Virus record (IMG/VR): IMGVR_UViG_3300033830_000018 | Location: 1-6,951 of that record | Length of the DNA stretch: 6,951 nucleotides | Reading direction: 5' to 3' (one strand) | In this document: piece after piece, positions 240 to 6,951 of the stretch | Layout: each line of letters begins with the position of its first letter | How positions within the stretch are numbered: the stretch's first letter is position 1 | The notes under the pieces: generated by a model | The model's database searches: none | What the model was told of the DNA's origin: nothing | The model's input: the letters and a program-made list of their open reading frames with translations, nothing else | Translations under genes and position numbers: made by a program

Positions 240-434
240 ATGGTTGAAATAAAGTTAAGATGGAGGATAAAGTCAACGAAAAAGAATGGTAAGGTATACC
301 CTCTATATTATATATCAGTACCAGGTAAATCGGCTGTTTTTTTATTGCAATACGAACCATATTTAGACCCAGAAAGGCAAATAATCTTTTTCAGACCCAA
401 GCAGAACCAAAGCCAACAACCACAAAGTCAATAA
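240..434 (+). CDS. Small basic protein (64 aa), possible AbrB/SpoVT-like swapped-hairpin DNA-binding protein
   Basis: ORF track 228..434. ATG 240 is preferred because GGTGA (227-231) is a Shine-Dalgarno 8 nt upstream. The basic beta-rich N-terminus with KNGKVYPLYYISVP resembles the AbrB-type 'YxITIP' hairpin; Q/S-rich tail. The family call is by eye. Confidence 0.6.
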   Translation: MVEIKLRWRIKSTKKNGKVYPLYYISVPGKSAVFLLQYEPYLDPERQIIFFRPKQNQSQQPQSQ

Positions 435-1447: not shown

Positions 1448-1454
1448 CTTAAAC

Positions 1455-1470
1455 AACAGCTGTTTTAGAG
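1455..1470. repeat. Palindromic motif copy 1 (AACAGCTGTTttagag)
   Basis: Perfect 10-bp palindrome at 1455-1464; 1455-1470 is identical to 1771-1786. Confidence 0.85.
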
Positions 1471-1485
1471 GTATCTAGCTCGTCA

Positions 1486-1521
1486 TTTTCAGTCTAACTA
1501 GTTGGGCAGAAAATTTAAATA
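1486..1521 (+). promoter_or_regulatory. Conserved promoter module copy 1: imperfect inverted repeat + BRE (GCAGAAAA) + TATA (TTTAAATA 1514-1521)
   Basis: ttttc-agtc-taac-ta-gttg-ggca-gaaaa-tttaaata. TATA ends 24 nt before ATG 1545 (leaderless). Aligns without gaps to 1810-1845 and 2316-2351. Confidence 0.85.
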
Positions 1522-1544
1522 TCAGTCCTAACAATAGTTAAATA

Positions 1545-1736
1545 ATGACGCCCCAAGAAGTAGTAAAGGAAGAAATCATAAAAATGTTAGAAAAGGACTT
1601 CGACCAGCTACAAAAACTTATTGATTATATTGCAAAGACAAAAAATTTAGATTTAGACAGGAAAAAGGTTGGCGAAGCTTATTTTTTAGCCCAGAAAATT
1701 GACATGGAGTTATATAGATTAATTCTCTTGATCTAA
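1545..1736 (+). CDS. Small helical hypothetical protein (63 aa)
   Basis: ORF with its own consensus promoter at leaderless spacing and a downstream T-tract; amphipathic charged helices. Confidence 0.85.
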   Translation: MTPQEVVKEEIIKMLEKDFDQLQKLIDYIAKTKNLDLDRKKVGEAYFLAQKIDMELYRLILLI

Positions 1737-1747
1737 AAACTAACCCG

Positions 1748-1764
1748 TTTTTTATTTACTTTTT
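1748..1764 (+). terminator. Oligo-T terminator
   Basis: ttttttatttactttttt-like tract starting 12 nt after the stop; near-identical tract at 2236-2253. Confidence 0.7.
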
Positions 1765-1786
1765 CTCTCAAACAGCTGTTTTAGAG
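1765..1786. repeat. Palindromic motif copy 2 (CTCTCAAACAGCTGTTTTAGAG)
   Basis: 22-bp inverted repeat with a single mismatched pair, centre CAGCTG at 1773-1778. Confidence 0.9.
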
Positions 1787-1809
1787 TTGTTTCGCCGTAC
1801 CCAGCGTCC

Positions 1810-1845
1810 TTTTCTGCCTAACCTATTGGGCAGAAACTTTATATA
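1810..1845 (+). promoter_or_regulatory. Conserved promoter module copy 2 (TATA TTTATATA 1838-1845)
   Basis: ttttc-tgcc-taac-ct-attg-ggca-gaaac-tttatata. TTTCTGCC (1811-1818) and GGCAGAAA (1829-1836) form a perfect 8-bp inverted pair. Confidence 0.85.
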
Positions 1846-1875
1846 TTTCCAAACGAATATTATAATGGCGAAAAT

Positions 1876-2235
1876 ATGAGAACTCAAAAGGCTCAAAAGG
1901 GAAATAGAAGTCAAGAAGAAAACAAATTGTATTTTTGCAACCTTTGTGGTTTTATTGCAGAAAGTTATGAAGAACTTGATATGCATTATACGTTTGAACA
2001 CGACCCAGACCCCGATCTTGGTTATGAATTAGAAGTGATGTGGGAAAACAAAAAGAAAAAGAAGAAAGCAAAAGGTTTGAAGGGAAAGGCATTTGAACAG
2101 CTAGAATTATTAATAAACGGTGAGGATTACAAAAACGAGTATGTCGGATGGTGCCATATTCCTTACGAAATAATAACAAGGAAGAAAGGCAACAGATACG
2201 TAATTAAGGTCGTTCCAGGAGTTGAAATTTGTTAA
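1876..2235 (+). CDS. C2H2 zinc-finger protein (119 aa)
   Basis: C-x2-C-x12-H-x4-H motif (YFCNLCGFIAESYEELDMHYTFEH), then acidic DPDPD and a poly-Lys tract; has its own promoter and terminator. Confidence 0.85.
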   Translation: MRTQKAQKGNRSQEENKLYFCNLCGFIAESYEELDMHYTFEHDPDPDLGYELEVMWENKKKKKKAKGLKGKAFEQLELLINGEDYKNEYVGWCHIPYEIITRKKGNRYVIKVVPGVEIC

Positions 2236-2253
2236 TTTTTTTATTTATTTCTT
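2236..2253 (+). terminator. Oligo-T terminator
   Basis: tttttttatttatttctt immediately after TAA 2235. Confidence 0.7.
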
Positions 2254-2255
2254 CT

Positions 2256-2273
2256 CTCAAACAGCTGTTTGAG
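2256..2273. repeat. Palindromic motif copy 3 (CTCAAACAGCTGTTTGAG, perfect 18 bp)
   Basis: Perfect 18-bp palindrome read directly; centre CAGCTG at 2262-2267. Confidence 0.92.
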
Positions 2274-2315
2274 GTCTCTTTCTTTCCTCCTCTCCACCGA
2301 CCGCTCCAACTCCGT

Positions 2316-2351
2316 TTTTCCTCCTAACTGGTTATGCAGAAAATTTAAATA
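2316..2351 (+). promoter_or_regulatory. Conserved promoter module copy 3 (TATA TTTAAATA 2344-2351)
   Basis: ttttc-ctcc-taac-tg-gtta-tgca-gaaaa-tttaaata. GCAGAAAATTTAAATATC is identical to copy 1. Confidence 0.85.
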
Positions 2352-2382
2352 TCTGAGTTAGCACATATATAATTGATCAAAT

Positions 2383-2961
2383 ATGTCCTCTCCACAAGTT
2401 AAGTCAAGCCCCCAACCACAAGTCAAAACAAATCCTAATTCTATAAATCAAACAAATGCTAGTCAAATAACCTGGGAGACCATCTTAAGGTCTCCCAGGA
2501 TTACCAAGGAACATGTAGAGTATGCAATTAACAATATTGATCAAGCTCCATTACTGCCCCATGAATTTGTTTACAGTCAAGTCGCTACTGATGTCAAAAT
2601 CTCCTACCCCCGCTCTATCGCAATTAGTGGTGTAGGTGGTATAATTGGTGCAGTACTTTCAATAAAACACACCGATAACATATCTTATTTCGTAACTACT
2701 GAGGAAGTTATTAATGCAACCGAGAATTCACCACTGTTTCTCGCAAAGTTCTCGTTAGAAAAACTAAGTAAAATCTATCAAAATACTGAGGTTATCATCC
2801 TGAAACTGAATGAATTTGAGAAAATTAAGTTGTTGCTAAGTCAAGGAGGAGTCTATATTTCTGGTTTGCCATATGAGATTACTATTCAGATAGCACAACT
2901 AGCGGGGTTTGGTAGGCTTTGGCACTTTTCACCAATTCAGCAAAAATTCTTTGTATTCTGA
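2383..2961 (+). CDS. Hypothetical protein (192 aa), possibly a degenerate P-loop/AAA+ (DnaC/IstB-like) fold
   Basis: ORF with its own promoter. S/P/Q/N-rich N-terminus followed by an alpha/beta pattern. The fold assignment is inference (see findings). Confidence 0.8.
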   Translation: MSSPQVKSSPQPQVKTNPNSINQTNASQITWETILRSPRITKEHVEYAINNIDQAPLLPHEFVYSQVATDVKISYPRSIAISGVGGIIGAVLSIKHTDNISYFVTTEEVINATENSPLFLAKFSLEKLSKIYQNTEVIILKLNEFEKIKLLLSQGGVYISGLPYEITIQIAQLAGFGRLWHFSPIQQKFFVF

Positions 2962-2976
2962 GTATTCTGATTCTGA
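2953..2976 (+). repeat. Short tandem repeat GTATTCTGA x2 + TTCTGA
   Basis: gtattctga-gtattctga-ttctga spans the stop codon of the 192-aa gene and runs into the next ribosome site. Confidence 0.75.
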
Positions 2977-2989
2977 GGTGGCGACAAAA

Positions 2990-3748
2990 ATGACCGAATT
3001 TGAACTTGAGATAAAAAAGTTTAGATGGTTAATTTCCCAGGGTTATATAACACCACAAGAACTGGCATTTTACTCCAACTTTTACGATATCCAGATGACC
3101 AGTACTGTGAATTTTCAAGGATATGAGATATTGACTCCATTGTTTGTGTTGGCGAGACCAAGCAAGTTTGACCAAGTAAAAAGAGAACTGCCTCAGGCAG
3201 AAATAGCAGATCCATATAGCAAAAAGTTCCCATTAATTTCATTGATAAGTCTAGAAAAATTCATTAACACTCTAGTTAATCTCAAAATACCATACTACTT
3301 CTTCTCAGTGTGGTTGCATAGATCGTATAATGATATTCCAGAATCAGGTCAATTATTACTGAGTAAGCTCATTAATATGGCGAATTCTTCCTACAAATAT
3401 GTTATAAAAAGTTATAACATCCCTTCATCATCTTCAGAAGAACCAGCATTACCAACGGATCTAGAGAAAATAATATGTCATTTCAGGAAAATGTTGGGTA
3501 ATAAGGATAACTGCGACGATAATGACTGGTGGAAGTATAATTTGTGGAACAAATCTAGTGTAACTGGTACTACAACTGCAAATAGTACAACAACCATCGG
3601 AAGGAAAGAAATAGAGAAGTTAGCGTTGAAATACAATGTATCACCAATTTGTTTACAGTACGTTATAATGTATAACAAAAACCCGTGTCACCTTTCCCCA
3701 TTTCTTCTGCTCCAAATCAAATCAGACCTCTCTTCTTCCTCTTCATAA
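2990..3748 (+). CDS. Hypothetical protein (252 aa)
   Basis: ORF track 2909..3748. The in-frame ATG at 2990 is preferred because GAGGTG (2975-2980) precedes it and it avoids overlap with the upstream gene. Ser and Thr low-complexity linkers separate small Cys/His-containing C-terminal segments. Confidence 0.85.
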   Translation: MTEFELEIKKFRWLISQGYITPQELAFYSNFYDIQMTSTVNFQGYEILTPLFVLARPSKFDQVKRELPQAEIADPYSKKFPLISLISLEKFINTLVNLKIPYYFFSVWLHRSYNDIPESGQLLLSKLINMANSSYKYVIKSYNIPSSSSEEPALPTDLEKIICHFRKMLGNKDNCDDNDWWKYNLWNKSSVTGTTTANSTTTIGRKEIEKLALKYNVSPICLQYVIMYNKNPCHLSPFLLLQIKSDLSSSSS

Positions 3749-3771
3749 TTTTTTCCTCTCTTCCTCTCCTT
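3749..3771 (+). terminator. Oligo-T/pyrimidine terminator between convergent genes
   Basis: ttttttcctctcttcctctcctt directly after TAA 3748. Confidence 0.6.
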
Positions 3772-3772
3772 A

Positions 3773-4294
3773 TCACAGGGTATTCGTATTCTCCTTTCTC
3801 TCTCTTTTCGCTATCTTTTTTGCATCTATTACTTCTATTATTCCCTCTTCCTCCAGATATTCTAGCACTGCGTCGCTATCATCTATCACTATTACCTTAT
3901 CTTGGTCGTATTTTTCCATTAGCTCCTTTACGATAATTCTCTTAAACTCATGGTCTTTTCTGTAGTCCTTCTCACCTCTCAGCACGACCTCATTCGGCTC
4001 TATCCCTATCTCTGACAGCTGTTTGAGAGTTTCCTTACGTTGTTTTTCCGAACGACCGCTGACTACTGCTATCACTTCTGGCTTTTCCTCCTCAATTAAT
4101 CGTTTGACGAACCTGATAACTTCCCACTTAGGTTCGTCCAGGTTCATGAACCTCGGTGATTGATAACATTCCCAAAACACACGGTCGGGTGTCCAAGATA
4201 ATGTTTTCTTGTCTCCTCTGGATATCTTCTCGCATTCGTACCACCTAGCAGAAGTATCGAAAAGCGTGCCGTCCAAATCTAGGATTAGCATCAT
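3773..4294 (-). CDS. HAD-superfamily phosphatase, similar to the 3'-phosphatase domain of T4 polynucleotide kinase/phosphatase (PseT)
   Basis: All four HAD motifs are present: I LILDLDGTL, II VVSGR, III RKDHEFK, IV VIDDSD. SGR, R-K-D-x3-K and DD match the PNKP phosphatase pattern. ATGA overlap with the upstream gene and a GGTGGAGG ribosome site. Confidence 0.9.
   Translation of the reverse strand: MMLILDLDGTLFDTSARWYECEKISRGDKKTLSWTPDRVFWECYQSPRFMNLDEPKWEVIRFVKRLIEEEKPEVIAVVSGRSEKQRKETLKQLSEIGIEPNEVVLRGEKDYRKDHEFKRIIVKELMEKYDQDKVIVIDDSDAVLEYLEEEGIIEVIDAKKIAKRERKENTNTL
4010..4029 (-). repeat. Palindromic motif copy 4, intragenic (minus strand CTCTCAAACAGCTGTCAGAG)
   Basis: 15-nt exact match (CTCTCAAACAGCTGT) to copies 2 and 3; lies inside the HAD gene, coding TLKQLSE. 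Confidence 0.65.
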
Positions 4295-4851
4295 TTTCCT
4301 CCACCTTGTTGTTTAAAACCTAGTATTGTTATCTCTCCATTCACTTCTTTGAAGTCTAACTCCTTAGCTTTCCCCTCGCGGTTATATACGAGCCACAATA
4401 CTTCGGCACCGTTTTCGTCTTTCCCCCATTTTAGTTTGCTACATTTCCCATCAAATTTAGTATAAAAGTAGTTTATCGCTTCCTGGTCATTTTTTTCTTC
4501 TTGCAGTTTGTCTAACGTAGCTGGGTCAAACGGTTGATCAAATAGGTAGATCTTCTTATTACCTTTTCCGTCATCAAAAACGAAATATATCCCGAATTTG
4601 AACCCGTTAAGGTTTGAAGTTGCCATTAGGTCGCGATGTTTCCTGATAAATTCGTTATCCGCAACAGCAGAAATATAAAGAGTGTCATGTCCGTCACCTA
4701 TGCCTATACATAATAAGTTTGCATGTGCGGGTTTGTCGGCTTTTACGTAGAAAGCGACGTATGTTACAGCAATGGTTGGTGTAGTTTTGGGTATGTACCC
4801 GTGGACACGCACTATGAAAAACTTATCTATGCTGATTGACGAGCTTACCAT
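4291..4851 (-). CDS. Hypothetical beta-rich protein (186 aa)
   Basis: ORF with TATA TTTTTAAA (4882-4875, minus strand) ending 24 nt before ATG 4851; translationally coupled to the HAD gene. Confidence 0.85.
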   Translation of the reverse strand: MVSSSISIDKFFIVRVHGYIPKTTPTIAVTYVAFYVKADKPAHANLLCIGIGDGHDTLYISAVADNEFIRKHRDLMATSNLNGFKFGIYFVFDDGKGNKKIYLFDQPFDPATLDKLQEEKNDQEAINYFYTKFDGKCSKLKWGKDENGAEVLWLVYNREGKAKELDFKEVNGEITILGFKQQGGGK

Positions 4852-4873
4852 GCTAAATACTTCACGCGATATT

Positions 4874-4889
4874 CTTTAAAAAAGTCGAG
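4874..4889 (-). promoter_or_regulatory. Leftward promoter CTCGACTTTTTTAAAG
   Basis: Leaderless spacing to ATG 4851; resembles 185-202. Confidence 0.7.
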
Positions 4890-4895
4890 TTAGTT

Positions 4896-4913
4896 CTCAA
4901 ACATATGTTTGAG
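4896..4913. repeat. Palindromic motif copy 5 (CTCAAACATATGTTTGAG, perfect 18 bp)
   Basis: Same arms as copy 3 with the central GC replaced by TA; sits between divergent promoters. Confidence 0.9.
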
Positions 4914-4934
4914 GAAACGACTTATTTTGTCTTA

Positions 4935-4942
4935 TTTTTAAA
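4935..4942 (+). promoter_or_regulatory. Rightward TATA box (TTTTTAAA)
   Basis: Ends 24 nt before ATG 4966. Confidence 0.7.
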
Positions 4943-4965
4943 CCTTTTTGCGAGAAGTTAAAGAC

Positions 4966-5253
4966 ATGAAGCCAGAGTGTAAAGTTCTTTTAAAGGCGTT
5001 CGAAAGTCTTTCTTCTATTCAAAGTAAATATGATGAAGATTTTCCTGAAATGCTATCGTACATGTATCTTCTGCTAAAGGGGTACTGGAGAGTTAACGAT
5101 GACGGAGAAACTGAAGAAGTGAAAACACCGCCGTTTACGACTATATCCCTCCTTAACGCCATGAGAGAAATCACGAAAAGAATTAGGAACGGTACCACAA
5201 TCGAAGAAATCATAAGCGAAAAGGAATTATGCGGGGATGTTGAGGAGGTATGA
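4966..5253 (+). CDS. Acidic hypothetical protein (95 aa)
   Basis: The ORF track starts at TTG 4948, but ATG 4966 (MKPECK...) is at leaderless distance from the TATA; ATGA overlap with the next gene. Confidence 0.8.
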   Translation: MKPECKVLLKAFESLSSIQSKYDEDFPEMLSYMYLLLKGYWRVNDDGETEEVKTPPFTTISLLNAMREITKRIRNGTTIEEIISEKELCGDVEEV

Positions 5254-5666
5254 CAGCAATAAATTCAACCGTGATAAATGCGTTACCTCCTTTTTTCTAC
5301 ACACAGGTCTTTCTTGTTGATATCGCAGGAGGGTTCATTATAATGACAATAATTGAGCTGTTTCTGCTAAGAAACAGTAGCCTAACCCATCTACGACTTG
5401 CTTTGCCGTTCCTAACGTTTTCTCTCGGGTTTACTCTTATATCGTTATATCTTTCTCCATACATAACATATAACCCAGTATACACTACGCCGTACAACGT
5501 AACGTACAGGATTACGCCCTACAGTACCGATGGTGCTGTTCTTCTATACATCAGTATCGCAATCCTTGCCATGGCTATAGCATACTTTATTTATGCGTTT
5601 GCGGTCGATGTGTTGCACCTTTCTTTTGGTGGTGGTAGTAAAGATGATGGTTATTTCATACCTTAG
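5250..5666 (+). CDS. Membrane protein (138 aa, about 3 transmembrane helices)
   Basis: Three hydrophobic stretches (VFLVDIAGGFIIMTIIELFLL, LALPFLTFSLGFTLISLYL, GAVLLYISIAILAMAIAYFIYAFAV); GAGGAGG ribosome site; Y/T/P-rich loop with an NVT sequon. Confidence 0.85.
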   Translation: MTAINSTVINALPPFFYTQVFLVDIAGGFIIMTIIELFLLRNSSLTHLRLALPFLTFSLGFTLISLYLSPYITYNPVYTTPYNVTYRITPYSTDGAVLLYISIAILAMAIAYFIYAFAVDVLHLSFGGGSKDDGYFIP

Positions 5667-5677
5667 GGGTAATACCC

Positions 5678-6256
5678 ATGTTAATGTTTAAGAAAAAAAC
5701 GTTGCCAATCGTCTATAAGAATTACGACGCATTATTATTTTTGCCCCCAGCCATAGTCAGCATTGATAAAAAAACGAGGATAATAGAAAAAAATGGCGTA
5801 CATGTTGCGATAATGTATTCGGAAACCAACGGCATTTCTGTGATGATGGATTTGCCCATTGATTTTCTGAAATTATACTATAAGATGACTACACAAGTAA
5901 ATCAGGGGAACCCCAGTGACAGGATAGTCTATTTTGCAATAGTTTACATTTCTCCGCAAGCGTATGCAAGAGAAAGAGCAAAAGTACTAAAAATGAGTAC
6001 GAACACTAAAAAGAAGTTTTTCATCTTCCCAAGGTGGATTTGGCTCAACCTGGAGCGTCATAACGATACGATGAGTTATTTCGTCATGAACAAATTTGAA
6101 GACGATGACCCTGCAAACTATTCGAAGGAATTCGACACATTCGGTGCCGTTGGGATTACCTTCAACAATTACTTTATTTTCGCTAGTGTTGCGAGAAAGG
6201 AGTACATAGCTTCTGTAAATAAACAAATATCCCTCGGTGTGGGGGTGGGGTTATAA
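5678..6256 (+). CDS. Hypothetical protein (192 aa)
   Basis: ORF 11 nt after the previous stop with a GGGGT ribosome site; TAATG overlap with the next gene. Confidence 0.82.
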   Translation: MLMFKKKTLPIVYKNYDALLFLPPAIVSIDKKTRIIEKNGVHVAIMYSETNGISVMMDLPIDFLKLYYKMTTQVNQGNPSDRIVYFAIVYISPQAYARERAKVLKMSTNTKKKFFIFPRWIWLNLERHNDTMSYFVMNKFEDDDPANYSKEFDTFGAVGITFNNYFIFASVARKEYIASVNKQISLGVGVGL

Positions 6257-6780
6257 TGTCTCTCTCATATTTGCAATCACTCGTTGGGAAAAATGTGATA
6301 TTATTCAACTATCTACGTAATGTATTCAAAAATAAAATATACAAAATAGTCGAAAATGGGGACGAATATACTCTTTATATTGATATGGGGATAGCTAGTA
6401 GGTTACAGCACAGGATCACATATCCTGGGATTTACTTCATTACGGATGTAATGATACAGGGTACCAACTATGTAATTTTTCTAAAAAAACAAGTCGACCT
6501 GAAGAAGTTTGCAATAGTAAGCTCTGTAACAACTTCTGAATATTACGTATCTTCGTACCGTAAAATACAGTATAAAACCGATGAGGGGTACATATTCGAC
6601 GCTTTAGAATTCGATATAGGCGGGTTCAAGCACCTTACATTTAACTATAATAAATGTATTATAGCGAAAGCGAAAAAGACTGGTCATAAGCGTATTGCGT
6701 TATGCCTAGGTGATAGTGTTATAATTGAAGATATAAATGATGTTTCGTGCAGTGACTGTGAGTGGTTTACGGTTGAGTAG
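6256..6780 (+). CDS. Hypothetical beta-rich protein (174 aa) with C-terminal cysteines (CxxC)
   Basis: Coupled ORF with a G-rich ribosome site (GGGGGTGGGG); four Cys in the last ~45 aa, including CSDC. Confidence 0.82.
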   Translation: MSLSYLQSLVGKNVILFNYLRNVFKNKIYKIVENGDEYTLYIDMGIASRLQHRITYPGIYFITDVMIQGTNYVIFLKKQVDLKKFAIVSSVTTSEYYVSSYRKIQYKTDEGYIFDALEFDIGGFKHLTFNYNKCIIAKAKKTGHKRIALCLGDSVIIEDINDVSCSDCEWFTVE

Positions 6781-6791
6781 GGTGATGGACA

Positions 6792-6951
6792 ATGGTATAT
6801 AATAAAAAGGACGAAGTCCCTTCTGCCGAGCAATTCCAATTTATTGTGTATAAAGAGGTATGTATGGGGAACAGTAGTATGGTATATCCTACTTTAGCTA
6901 TAGAGAGGCTGAACACTGTAATGCTTACCTATTACAGCGACGAGATAGAAG
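6792..6951 (+). CDS. Hypothetical protein, 5' fragment running off the window
   Basis: Not in the ORF track. GGTGA (6781-6785) precedes ATG 6792; the frame is open to the end: MVYNKKDEVPSAEQFQFIVYKEVCMGNSSMVYPTLAIERLNTVMLTYYSDEIE. Confidence 0.75.
   Translation, partial: MVYNKKDEVPSAEQFQFIVYKEVCMGNSSMVYPTLAIERLNTVMLTYYSDEIE

What the first reader, a model, noticed from the sequence alone, without database searches (positions are those of the whole stretch)
1455..4913. Dispersed 18-bp palindrome CTCAAACA-NN-TGTTTGAG, five copies, with a symmetry-preserving centre change
Seen: copies centred at 1457-1462, 1773-1778, 2262-2267, 4016-4021 and 4902-4907. Copies 3 and 5 are perfect 18-bp palindromes differing only in the central dinucleotide (GC versus TA), and both versions remain self-complementary. 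Both divergent promoter regions in the window contain a copy. The distance from palindrome centre to the downstream TATA varies (57, 65, 82 nt), which is unusual for a simple promoter-occluding operator. Inference: a binding site for a dimeric element-encoded protein, such as a master regulator, partition/packaging or nucleoid factor, or the recombinase (6-bp arms plus 6-bp core). A symmetric core argues somewhat against classical directional tyrosine-recombinase sites.
Basis: partly seen in the sequence, partly recalled or inferred. Interest (0 to 1): 0.72.

Follow-up and report, generated by a model that had tools for sequence, protein, structure and literature searches.

The report
Promoter-linked palindrome of Sulfolobus monocaudaviruses
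The 18-bp palindrome is real and is one of about 30 copies per genome of a promoter-associated motif shared by a small clade of spindle-shaped archaeal viruses (SMV1-4), so it is most likely the operator of a virus-encoded transcription regulator and not a recombination site.

Summary
The window is a whole 6.95-kb IMG/VR contig from a relative of Sulfolobus monocaudavirus SMV4. The palindrome CTCAAACA-NN-TGTTTGAG is present as described. There are four copies with 0-2 mismatches (chance expectation 0.1). The fifth, copy 1, has an intact right arm but a 3-nt insertion in the left arm.

Whole-genome scans show 26-31 copies (3 or fewer mismatches) in each of SMV1, SMV3 and SMV4, against about 0.35 in shuffles. 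Of these, 58-84% lie in the 12-14% of DNA that is non-coding, mostly 6-60 nt from a start codon. SMV2 has decayed copies. ATV, ATV2, ATSV and STSV2 have essentially none.

The motif takes three positions: over the start site, merged with the TATA box, or upstream of it. It marks the promoters of all seven abundant SMV1 virion proteins. In the window it lies upstream of three early "anti-defence-type" promoter cassettes and between one pair of divergent promoters.

The arms vary independently with no compensatory changes, which points to protein recognition rather than a hairpin. The zinc-finger and D-63 proteins of the window are excluded as the common binder, and a recombinase site is not supported. 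The best candidate is a clade-specific tandem ribbon-helix-helix protein (SMV1 gp50), which is not encoded in the window. No binder was tested, and the motif appears undescribed in the literature I could search.

The parts
1448..1468 (.). Copy 1, degenerate: CTTAAA-CAA-CAGCTGTTTTAG. The right half-site is intact and the left arm is shifted by a 3-nt insertion. It lies in the divergent region between ORF317 (-) and ORF63 (+).
   Evidence: The right half is conserved in SMV4, SMV3, L014 and L052.
1767..1784 (.). Copy 2, CTCAAACAGCTGTTTTAG (1 mismatch). It lies 31 nt after the ORF63 stop, just downstream of a T-run, and its end is 91 nt upstream of the ORF119 start.
   Evidence: Conserved together with the upstream CCCGTTTTTTAT module in SMV3, L014, L046, L052 and L045.
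2256..2273 (.). Copy 3, a perfect palindrome CTCAAACAGCTGTTTGAG. It follows the ORF119 stop and a T-run, and its end is 109 nt upstream of the ORF192 start.
   Evidence: Conserved in SMV4, SMV3, L052 and L045, and decayed in L014.
4010..4027 (.). Copy 4, CTCTGACAGCTGTTTGAG (2 mismatches), inside the HAD/PNKP-phosphatase gene, where it encodes T-L-K-Q-L-S-E on the - strand. There is no promoter context.
   Evidence: The right arm is invariant in 6 orthologues while the left arm varies at synonymous sites. Its function is uncertain.
4896..4913 (.). Copy 5, a perfect palindrome CTCAAACATATGTTTGAG, midway between two divergent TATA boxes.
   Evidence: The motif is conserved in 7 sequences with centres TA, TC or GA.
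4874..4884 (-). TATA-like box (CTTTTTTAAAG on the - strand) for ORF186 and the HAD operon. The motif lies about 43-60 nt upstream of the inferred start site.
   Evidence: Sequence and conservation. The position of the start site is inferred, not mapped.
4934..4943 (+). TATA-like box (ATTTTTAAAC) for ORF95 (start 4966). The motif lies about 52-69 nt upstream of the inferred start site.
   Evidence: inference.
1494..1521 (+). Early/ADG-type promoter 1: CTAAC-TAGTTGGGCAGAAAA-TTTAAATA, in front of ORF63 (SSV1 D-63 family).
   Evidence: The SMV3 homologue gp48 is listed as ADG.67 in the supplement of PMC11065993.
1811..1845 (+). Early/ADG-type promoter 2, with the inverted repeat TTTCTGCC..GGCAGAAA overlapping the BRE, then TTTATATA, in front of ORF119 (C2H2 zinc finger).
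   Evidence: SMV3 gp47 is listed as ADG.04.
2324..2351 (+). Early/ADG-type promoter 3: CTAAC-TGGTTATGCAGAAAA-TTTAAATA, in front of ORF192 and ORF252 (annotated as virion structural proteins in SMV3 and SMV4).
   Evidence: SMV3 gp46 is listed as ADG.71.
1744..1757 (+). CCCGTTTTTTATT, a T-run module directly upstream of copy 2. It is probably the terminator of ORF63.
   Evidence: Conserved in 6 relatives. The terminator role is inferred from what is known of archaeal oligo-T termination.
2235..2247 (+). TTTTTTTATTTAT, a T-run module upstream of copy 3. It is probably the terminator of ORF119.
   Evidence: inference.
240..434 (+). ORF64, a basic 64-aa protein next to the integrase. It is found only in the SMV1-4 clade and is a secondary candidate binder.

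Best explanation
The palindrome is a cis-regulatory operator used throughout the genomes of the SMV1-SMV4 clade of large tailed spindle viruses. The core is AAACA-(GC|TA)-TGTTT with weaker outer CTC/GAG.

It is most likely bound by a sequence-specific protein that presents two equivalent DNA-reading units about one helical turn apart. That protein is most likely virus-encoded. Its effect on host RNA polymerase would depend on where the site sits.
- Over the start site or merged with the TATA box, as at most virion genes, it would hinder binding of TBP, TFB or RNA polymerase, or promoter opening.
- Upstream of BRE/TATA, which is the only kind found in this window, it would act as an upstream site. 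It could nucleate spreading towards the promoter, help recruit TBP/TFB, or insulate the cassette from read-through.

The best candidate binder is SMV1 gp50 and its orthologues. This is a 106-aa single-chain protein with two ribbon-helix-helix units, and it lies outside this 6.9-kb contig.

Shown here: the enrichment, the position, the conservation, the clade restriction and the independent variation of the arms. Inferred: that a protein binds, which protein it is, and the direction of regulation.
For: Enrichment and position
- Sites with 3 or fewer mismatches number 26 (SMV1), 29 (SMV4) and 31 (SMV3). The SMV1 and SMV4 shuffles give 0.33-0.37, and SMV3 was not shuffled. With 2 or fewer mismatches there are 14 and 22 in SMV1 and SMV4 against 0-0.03 in shuffles.
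- 15/26, 24/29 and 26/31 sites are intergenic, although the genomes are 86-88% coding (binomial p = 3e-8, 1e-17, 1e-17).
- Most sites lie 6-21 nt or 26-60 nt from a start codon.

Three regular geometries relative to BRE/TATA
- The TATA box lies 3-8 nt upstream of the motif.
- The left arm becomes TTTAAACA and forms part of the TATA box.
- The motif lies upstream of the TATA box.

Link to virion genes
- All promoters of the abundant SMV1 virion proteins (gp03 MCP, gp05, gp06, gp09, gp11, gp24-gp23; list from PMC12199143; numbering checked) carry the motif. That is 6/6 against 9/38 other putative unit starts (Fisher p = 7e-4, rough count).

Conservation
- Copies 2, 3 and 5 are conserved at orthologous positions while their flanks vary.
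- The palindrome-spacer-early-promoter cassette recurs in unrelated metagenomic contigs L037, L045 and L052.
- The flanks of the 90 sites carry at most 0.35 bit of information, so the copies are not simply duplicated DNA.

Protein recognition rather than structure
- Departures from the consensus are 135 one-sided against 4 complementary double changes.

Clade restriction
- Sites with 3 or fewer mismatches: SMV2 13 (only 2 with 2 or fewer mismatches), ATSV 2, and ATV, ATV2 and STSV2 0 each. ATV2 and STSV2 infect the same host genus.

Candidate gp50
- It is the only clade-specific small protein with a recognisable DNA-binding domain (Pfam RHH_1 1e-8; PHROG 876 'transcriptional repressor' 9e-29).
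- The AF2 model has pLDDT 91 and shows two beta-alpha-alpha units. The best structural matches are the tandem-RHH TraY chains of the F relaxosome (TM 0.6-0.69, probability 1.0).
- True orthologues occur only in SMV1-4.

Precedents
- AvtR is a tandem RHH protein with about 8 genomic sites that both activates and represses. SvtR binds about 80 nt upstream of the TATA box of a structural gene (PMC5569661).
Against: - No binding data exist, and no start sites are mapped. TATA boxes were assigned by eye.
- The motif-bearing virion genes are among the most highly and earliest expressed SMV1a genes. That fits poorly with simple repression at start-site-overlapping sites.
- gp50's own core promoter has no copy with 3 or fewer mismatches in SMV1 or SMV3, and only a 3-mismatch copy about 57 nt upstream of the TATA box in SMV4. 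The usual autoregulation signature is therefore missing.
- SMV2 keeps a gp50 orthologue (62% identity), yet its motif copies are decayed.
- The coupling of the two centre bases is not what independent half-site reading predicts.
- The outgroup genomes were scanned over their first 50 kb only.
Confidence: 0.7

Rival explanations
1. The motif is a host-directed element. It would be either the site of a Saccharolobus/Sulfolobus transcription factor that the virus borrows, or an extended core-promoter element (an AT-rich promoter-proximal or initiator region) that strengthens transcription without any dedicated viral factor.
For: In the commonest geometry, AAACATATGTTT would fall roughly at -14 to -3, the region that melts. 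The AT-rich TA centre is used there, whereas GC centres dominate elsewhere. The motif-bearing genes are the most highly expressed ones. SMV1-4 infect Sulfolobus/Saccharolobus, while ATV and ATSV infect Acidianus.
Against: ATV2 (host S. solfataricus) and STSV2 (host Sulfolobus) have no copies in 50 kb each. The motif also occurs 40-110 nt upstream of TATA boxes and merged with TATA boxes, which a start-site-proximal core element would not do. Strict dyad symmetry is not a property of known archaeal core-promoter elements (established knowledge). Host genomes could not be scanned.
Confidence: 0.15
2. The palindrome works through its structure, as an RNA hairpin (5'-UTR, processing or terminator element) or a DNA cruciform, and not as a protein-recognised sequence.
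For: The perfect copies can form a 7-bp stem. Copies 2 and 3 sit just after stop codons and T-runs. The simple terminator scan lists 2255-2274.
Against: There is no compensatory variation: 135 one-sided changes against 4 complementary doubles. The sequence of the arms, not just their pairing, is conserved across about 90 sites. The T-run precedes the stem instead of following it. The terminator-like count is not above shuffles (4 against 2.1 +/- 1.5). In the commonest geometry the inferred start site falls inside or after the motif, so the hairpin would not be transcribed (inference). There is no Rfam match.
Confidence: 0.06
3. The motif is a site for DNA transactions other than transcription: integrase or recombinase core sites, binding sites for the replication initiator (the DnaA-like protein), or packaging, partition or nucleoid-organising sites.
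For: The palindrome has 6-8-bp arms around a short centre. An integrase gene and a DnaA-like gene are present in the clade. The copies are dispersed around the circle, and a conserved copy lies inside the integrase gene itself (SMV1 37653, SMV3 40346, SMV4 38526).
Against: There are 26-31 copies per genome, they are not clustered, and they lie overwhelmingly next to start codons. The symmetric centre would give no directionality to a recombinase. No par genes were noted in the annotations. Initiator sites normally cluster at one origin (established knowledge).
Confidence: 0.04
4. The copies are functionless remnants of duplicated intergenic cassettes.
For: Copies 2 and 3 share about 25 nt of upstream T-rich sequence. 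SMV4 gp50 and gp53 have identical upstream regions.
Against: Most copies share nothing beyond the 18-mer (flank information at most 0.35 bit). The motif survives at orthologous sites across genomes that are 75-85% identical, and it appears in non-homologous contexts.
Confidence: 0.03

Closest known systems
AvtR of Acidianus filamentous virus 6 and its operators (PMC5569661; Peixeiro et al. 2013, as cited there)
   Same: AvtR is a single-chain protein with two RHH units, like the predicted fold of SMV1 gp50. It has multiple sites (about 8) in promoter regions of the viral genome, formed of imperfect inverted repeats. It can repress or activate depending on context.
   Different: The AvtR consensus (ATnnTnnTAnnACnTT) is unrelated to this motif. 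There is no detectable sequence relationship to gp50 in the PDB searches. The SMV motif has three to four times more copies and marks the virion genes. Binding by gp50 is untested.
SvtR of SIRV1 at the gp30 promoter (PMC5569661)
   Same: A viral regulator controls a virion structural gene from a site about 80 nt upstream of BRE/TATA. This is the same range as window copies 1-3 (58-83 nt), and the proposed mechanism is spreading towards the promoter.
   Different: SvtR is a homodimeric RHH protein with four known sites and a different consensus. No spreading or binding has been shown for the SMV motif.
F55 of SSV1 and its tandem-repeat operators (PMC5569661)
   Same: A viral RHH repressor has sites overlapping the start site or BRE of several promoters and sets the balance between carrier state and active replication. 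SMV1 is likewise a chronic virus (PMC12199143).
   Different: F55 sites are direct repeats (ATAGATAG) at four promoters of early genes. The SMV motif is an inverted repeat at about 15-25 promoters, including late or constitutive virion genes.
Position-dependent archaeal regulators such as TrmBL1/Tgr with the TGM palindrome, or SurR (from my own knowledge, not checked here)
   Same: One palindromic site represses when it lies downstream of the TATA box and activates when it lies upstream. This matches the mixed geometries seen here.
   Different: Those are cellular regulators of Thermococcales with different folds and motifs. The analogy is in mechanism only.
Early/anti-defence (ADG) regulatory sequences of SMV2-4, and the SMV2 inverted repeat with leucine-zipper gp37 (PMC11065993)
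   Same: They belong to the same viruses. The three promoters downstream of window copies 1-3 are of this published type, and homologues of their genes are listed as ADGs.
   Different: The published element is the BRE/TATA region with its own inverted repeat (TTCTGCC..GGCAGAA). The palindrome studied here is a separate element 35-95 nt further upstream, and it also occurs at virion genes that lack that promoter type.
aCcr1-box (PMC9976878)
   Same: [quoted passage not shown]
   Different: It is a 9-bp motif, A(T/G)G(A)TA(G)A(T/G)TACN, with an unrelated sequence. ATV encodes a homologue but has no copy of the SMV palindrome.

Membership tests
Operator of a viral or archaeal transcription regulator (SvtR/AvtR/F55 kind) | Repeat-structured site located in or next to BRE/TATA/start-site regions of several genes of the element | tested here: met
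   58-84% of sites are intergenic, and most lie 6-60 nt from start codons in three regular geometries.
Operator of a viral or archaeal transcription regulator (SvtR/AvtR/F55 kind) | Conserved at orthologous promoters while the surrounding non-coding DNA diverges | tested here: met
   Copies 2, 3 and 5 are conserved in 5-7 relatives that are 67-91% identical.
Operator of a viral or archaeal transcription regulator (SvtR/AvtR/F55 kind) | Specific binding by a cognate DNA-binding protein | not testable with these tools
   Candidates only: gp50 tandem RHH and ORF64. No EMSA or ChIP data were found in the literature searches.
Operator of a viral or archaeal transcription regulator (SvtR/AvtR/F55 kind) | The regulator's own promoter carries a site (autoregulation) | tested here: inconclusive
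   The core promoter of gp50 has no copy with 3 or fewer mismatches in SMV1 or SMV3. SMV4 has a 3-mismatch copy about 57 nt upstream of the TATA box. A strong copy sits immediately downstream of gp50, at the gp51 promoter.
Operator of a viral or archaeal transcription regulator (SvtR/AvtR/F55 kind) | Change in transcription when the site or the factor is altered | not testable with these tools
   Only a correlation is available: all abundant virion-protein promoters of SMV1 carry the motif.
Tyrosine-recombinase core/att site | One or a few sites per element, at the attachment or resolution locus | tested here: not met
   There are 26-31 dispersed copies per genome.
Tyrosine-recombinase core/att site | An asymmetric overlap region between the inverted arms that gives directionality | tested here: not met
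   The centre is self-complementary (GC or TA) in 73 of 90 sites.
Intrinsic terminator or structured RNA element | Stem maintained by compensatory changes, with a T-run after the stem | tested here: not met
   4 complementary doubles against 135 one-sided changes. The T-run lies upstream of the stem. There is no Rfam match, and the terminator scan is not above shuffles.
Centromere-like (parS) or origin-repeat sites | Clustered repeats next to par or initiator genes | tested here: not met
   The sites are spread over the whole circle at gene starts. No par genes appear in the annotations.
aCcr1-box | The 9-bp consensus A(T/G)G(A)TA(G)A(T/G)TACN | tested here: not met
   The sequence is unrelated to CTCAAACANNTGTTTGAG.
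Tandem ribbon-helix-helix DNA-binding proteins (TraY/AvtR kind), for the candidate gp50 | Two beta-alpha-alpha units in one chain forming a pseudo-dimer | tested here: met
   The AF2 model (pLDDT 91) has E3-11/H12-20/H25-39 and E58-66/H67-79/H84-98. Foldseek matches the TraY chains with TM 0.6-0.69 and probability 1.0. Pfam RHH_1 scores 1e-8.
AbrB/MazE swapped-hairpin proteins, for window ORF64 | Sequence or fold match to the family | tested here: inconclusive
   There is no Pfam hit, no PDB sequence hit and no Foldseek match with E below 0.8. Only the beta-beta-alpha-beta-beta order of elements in a pLDDT-73 monomer model fits.

The most novel reading that the evidence does not exclude
One clade-specific viral factor, most plausibly the tandem-RHH protein gp50 binding as two pseudo-dimers, reads about 30 palindromes per genome and acts according to site position. 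It would throttle the virion-gene promoters where the site covers the start site or TATA box. It would activate or insulate the early anti-defence cassettes where the site lies upstream. The CATATG and CAGCTG centres would define the two functional classes. This would be a single-factor circuit that sets the level of a chronic, non-lytic archaeal virus infection.
Probability: 0.2. Interest if true: 0.65.

Novelty: new member of a known kind. Interest (0 to 1): 0.5.

Why it matters
Gene regulation in the large tailed spindle viruses is essentially unknown, and the SMV1a transcriptome paper itself calls the pattern 'complicated' (PMC12199143). A single, easily recognised 18-bp motif gives a concrete, testable regulon and a short list of candidate regulators. 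It marks every abundant virion-protein promoter and also sits upstream of the predicted early anti-defence cassettes.

The motif is also a practical marker. It identifies SMV-type contigs in hot-spring metagenomes. It also helps place true start codons, as for SMV1 gp11.

It remains an ordinary kind of element, an operator-like palindrome, and nothing here suggests a new mechanism.

Tried and rejected
It was uninformative about hosts or proviruses.
- A guessed accession for SMV2 turned out to be Hydrogenobaculum phage HP1. I kept it only as an unrelated control; it has 0 sites.
- Literature searches for the motif strings and for promoter or palindrome descriptions in monocaudaviruses found nothing relevant. 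The original SMV1, SMV2-4 and ATV genome papers are not in the searchable library, so an earlier description cannot be excluded.
- The supplement of the SMV1a transcriptome paper is not held, so motif class could not be correlated with temporal class gene by gene.
- ORF64 as 'AbrB-like': Pfam, PDB sequence and Foldseek searches all came back negative.
- I looked for co-variation between gp50 and the motif. SMV2 at first appeared to lack gp50, but the gene lies in the last 0.9 kb of the genome. The predicted DNA-facing strand residues are invariant across the family, so there is no discriminating signal.
- Rejected as common binders because they are absent from motif-bearing genomes: zinc-finger ORF119, D-63-like ORF63, ORF317, ORF192, ORF252, the HAD phosphatase and ORF186.
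- The sigma-70 and terminator consensus scan added nothing, since this is an archaeal system.

Full report
**What the window is**

The 6951 bases are an entire IMG/VR contig, IMGVR_UViG_3300033830_000018. It is 83.6% identical over 89% of its length to Sulfolobus monocaudavirus SMV4. It also matches SMV3 (77.6%) and, over 4844-6951, SMV1 (90.8%).

The contig carries these genes:
- the 3' end of an integrase gene
- a basic 64-aa ORF (240-434)
- ORF317 on the - strand
- an SSV1 D-63-family ORF (1545-1736; Pfam 5.6e-16)
- a C2H2 zinc-finger ORF (1876-2235)
- two genes annotated as virion structural proteins in SMV3 and SMV4 (2383-2961 and 2990-3748)
- a HAD/PNKP-type phosphatase and ORF186 on the - strand
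- four conserved genes from 4966 onward

**Checking the observation**

The pattern CTCAAACANNTGTTTGAG occurs at 1767 (1 mismatch), 2256 (0), 4010 (2) and 4896 (0). The expectation is 0.10, and no shuffle out of 200 reached four.

Its right arm is intact, but its left arm is displaced by a 3-nt insertion. The distances to the TATA boxes and the placement in both divergent regions are as stated.

**The motif is used across the whole genome**

I fetched the complete genomes of SMV1, SMV4 and SMV3. Sites with 3 or fewer mismatches number 26, 29 and 31. Dinucleotide shuffles of SMV1 and SMV4 give about 0.35, and SMV3 was not shuffled.

The genomes are 86-88% coding, yet 15/26, 24/29 and 26/31 sites are intergenic (binomial p = 3e-8 to 1e-17). 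Gaps to the nearest start codon fall into three groups: 6-21 nt, 26-60 nt, and a smaller group at 70-160 nt. Window copies 1-3 belong to the last group.

A count matrix of 90 sites gives C-T-C-A-A-A-C-A-[G/T]-[C/A]-T-G-T-T-T-[G/a]-A-[G/a]. The flanks carry almost no information, at most 0.35 bit. The information in the arms is inflated because the sites were selected on those positions. The centre and the flanks are not affected by that selection.

**Position relative to promoters**

I read the sites in the orientation of their genes. They show three geometries.
- (A) A BRE-like GAAAA and a TATA-like octamer end 3-8 nt upstream of the motif, and the start codon follows 7-11 nt after it. This applies to SMV1 gp03, gp05, gp06, gp11, gp13, gp14 and gp51. 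With the usual Sulfolobus spacing, the motif would fall roughly between -17 and +1.
- (B) The left arm reads TTTAAACA and, together with preceding T's, forms the TATA box itself, with the start codon 11-21 nt after the motif. This applies to SMV1 gp09 and gp16, and to SMV4 gp08, gp19 and gp54-56.
- (C) The motif lies upstream of BRE/TATA, often between divergent promoters. This applies to SMV1 gp24/gp25, gp32 and gp38, and to SMV4 gp28, gp50 and gp53.

These TATA assignments were made by eye, and no start sites are mapped.

**The window's own copies**

Copy 5 is of type C. It sits between a - strand TATA box (4874-4884) and a + strand TATA box (4934-4943), and it is conserved in seven sequences whose centres are TA, TC or GA.

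Copies 2 and 3 each follow the previous gene's stop codon and a conserved T-run, CCCGTTTTTTAT. After a variable, pyrimidine-rich spacer comes a conserved promoter, CCTAAC..GCAGAAA-TTTAAATA. The same palindrome-spacer-promoter cassette recurs in the metagenomic contigs L037, L045 and L052.

That promoter is of the 'early/anti-defence gene' type described for SMV2-4 in PMC11065993. The SMV3 homologues of the three window genes (gp48, gp47, gp46) are listed there as ADGs. The palindrome itself is a separate element, further upstream.

Copy 4 lies inside a coding region. Its right arm is invariant in six orthologues, but the site has no promoter context. I leave its function open.

**Which genes carry the motif**

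The SMV1a transcriptome paper names gp03 (the major capsid protein, the most highly expressed gene at all times) and gp05, gp06, gp09, gp11, gp23 and gp24 as the abundant virion proteins. They are expressed early or throughout infection (PMC12199143). The SMV1a record uses the same gene numbers as SMV1.

All six promoters serving these seven genes carry the motif, against 9 of 38 other putative unit starts (Fisher p = 7e-4). The unit count is rough.

**Protein site or structure?**

Across the eight arm pairs of the 90 sites, 135 departures from the consensus are one-sided, 12 are non-complementary doubles and only 4 are complementary doubles. The T-runs precede the stem instead of following it. 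The terminator-like count is not above shuffles, and Rfam finds nothing. So the sequence itself is conserved, not the base-pairing.

**The centre**

Positions 9 and 10 are G/T and C/A, and they are strongly coupled. GC occurs 46 times and TA 27 times, with the mixed centres (GA/TC) only 12 times.

TA centres dominate geometry A, and GC centres dominate B and C. One inference is that the coupling reflects two functional classes. For example, there may be a need for an all-A/T stretch where the promoter melts, and not selection for symmetry as such. I could not separate these possibilities.

**Clade distribution**

| Virus | Sites (3 or fewer mismatches) | Note |
|---|---|---|
| SMV2 | 13 | only 2 with 2 or fewer mismatches; several are decayed versions at orthologous promoters |
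| ATSV | 2 | first 50 kb |
| ATV | 0 | first 50 kb |
| ATV2 | 0 | first 50 kb; host S. solfataricus |
| STSV2 | 0 | first 50 kb; host Sulfolobus |

Viruses that use the same host genus lack the motif. This favours a factor encoded by the SMV clade, although it does not exclude a host factor.

**Candidate binders**

I compared the SMV1 proteins with the other genomes and the window ORFs with all genomes. The zinc-finger ORF119 and the D-63-like ORF63 exist only in SMV3 and the window, so neither can be the common reader.

Among the small proteins found only in SMV1-4, only gp50 has a recognisable DNA-binding domain (Pfam RHH_1 1e-8; PHROG 876 'transcriptional repressor' 9e-29). Its family comprises about 50 clusters, all from SMV-like contigs. 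It has two RHH units in one chain in the AF2 model (pLDDT 91). The best structural matches are the tandem-RHH TraY chains of the F-plasmid relaxosome. Strong profile hits occur only in SMV1-4.

Two such pseudo-dimers on arms about 9-10 bp apart would match the usual geometry of RHH operators. This is inference.

Three points count against gp50:
- Its own promoter lacks a good site.
- SMV2 keeps the protein although its sites are decayed.
- The gene is not on this contig.

The 64-aa ORF of the window is also confined to the clade and is basic. It always sits next to the integrase. It has no detectable relatives of known function, and its model gave no structural match.

**Comparison with known systems**

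The closest parallels are the operators of archaeal viral RHH regulators (PMC5569661).
- AvtR is a tandem RHH protein with about 8 sites, and it acts as both activator and repressor.
- SvtR binds about 80 nt upstream of the TATA box of a structural gene.
- F55 has start-site and BRE-overlapping sites that control a carrier state.

The consensus sequences differ, and the aCcr1-box is unrelated. The element works like these operators. Membership in the sense of 'bound by protein X' cannot be tested with these tools.

**Verdict**

The motif appears undescribed in the literature I could search. However, the key genome papers are outside that library. I rate it a new member of a known kind, of moderate interest.

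Noticed in passing
window 1494-1521, 1811-1845, 2324-2351: Three copies of a second conserved element: the promoter CCTAAC-N-TT(G/A)(G/T)GCAGAAA-TTTA(A/T)ATA. An imperfect inverted repeat (TTTCTGCC..GGCAGAAA, clearest at 1811-1836) overlaps its BRE. It matches the published early/anti-defence promoter type of SMV2-4 and may be a second operator.
   Followed up: partly
window 1744-1757 and 2235-2247: A conserved T-run module, (A/G)CCCGTTTTTTAT, lies about 12 nt upstream of palindrome copies 2 and 3 and of their homologues in six relatives. It is probably the terminator of the preceding gene, so terminator and palindrome form a fixed unit.
   Followed up: partly
window 3773-4294 (- strand): The HAD/PNKP-type phosphatase gene is 86% identical at the nucleotide level to Acidianus tailed spindle virus. 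The rest of the window has no nucleotide match to that virus, which suggests recent gene exchange between viruses of different host genera.
   Followed up: no
window 2274-2323 and 3700-3800: Long pyrimidine-rich (C/T) tracts lie between copy 3 and its promoter, and in the convergent region after ORF252. Their length varies among relatives while the flanking elements are conserved.
   Followed up: no
L004 (SMV1) 16772-16886: The RefSeq start of SMV1 gp11 lies upstream of its own BRE/TATA and of the motif. The SMV1a record starts the gene 7 nt after the motif, so the motif helps to correct start-codon calls.
   Followed up: yes
L004 (SMV1) around 22418-22440, 27077-27100 and 48390-48415: The terminal sequence of a MITE or IS element, GGGGCGAGGCTTGTCGTTCATTT, lies directly beside motif-bearing promoters (gp16, gp51) and at the border of the IS200/605 element. 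This suggests that these promoter regions are preferred insertion targets.
   Followed up: no
L005/L006 (SMV4) 40880-41003 and 42513-42636: SMV4 gp50 and gp53 (homologues of SMV1 gp38) have identical upstream regions of more than 100 nt, including the palindrome. This is a recent tandem duplication of a motif-bearing cassette.
   Followed up: no
L004 37653, L061/L062 40346, SMV4 38526: A conserved copy of the motif, ATCAAACAGCTGTTTGTA (ATCAAACAGCTGTTTATA in SMV4), lies inside the integrase gene of SMV1, SMV3 and SMV4. The corresponding part of the gene is missing from the window.
   Followed up: no
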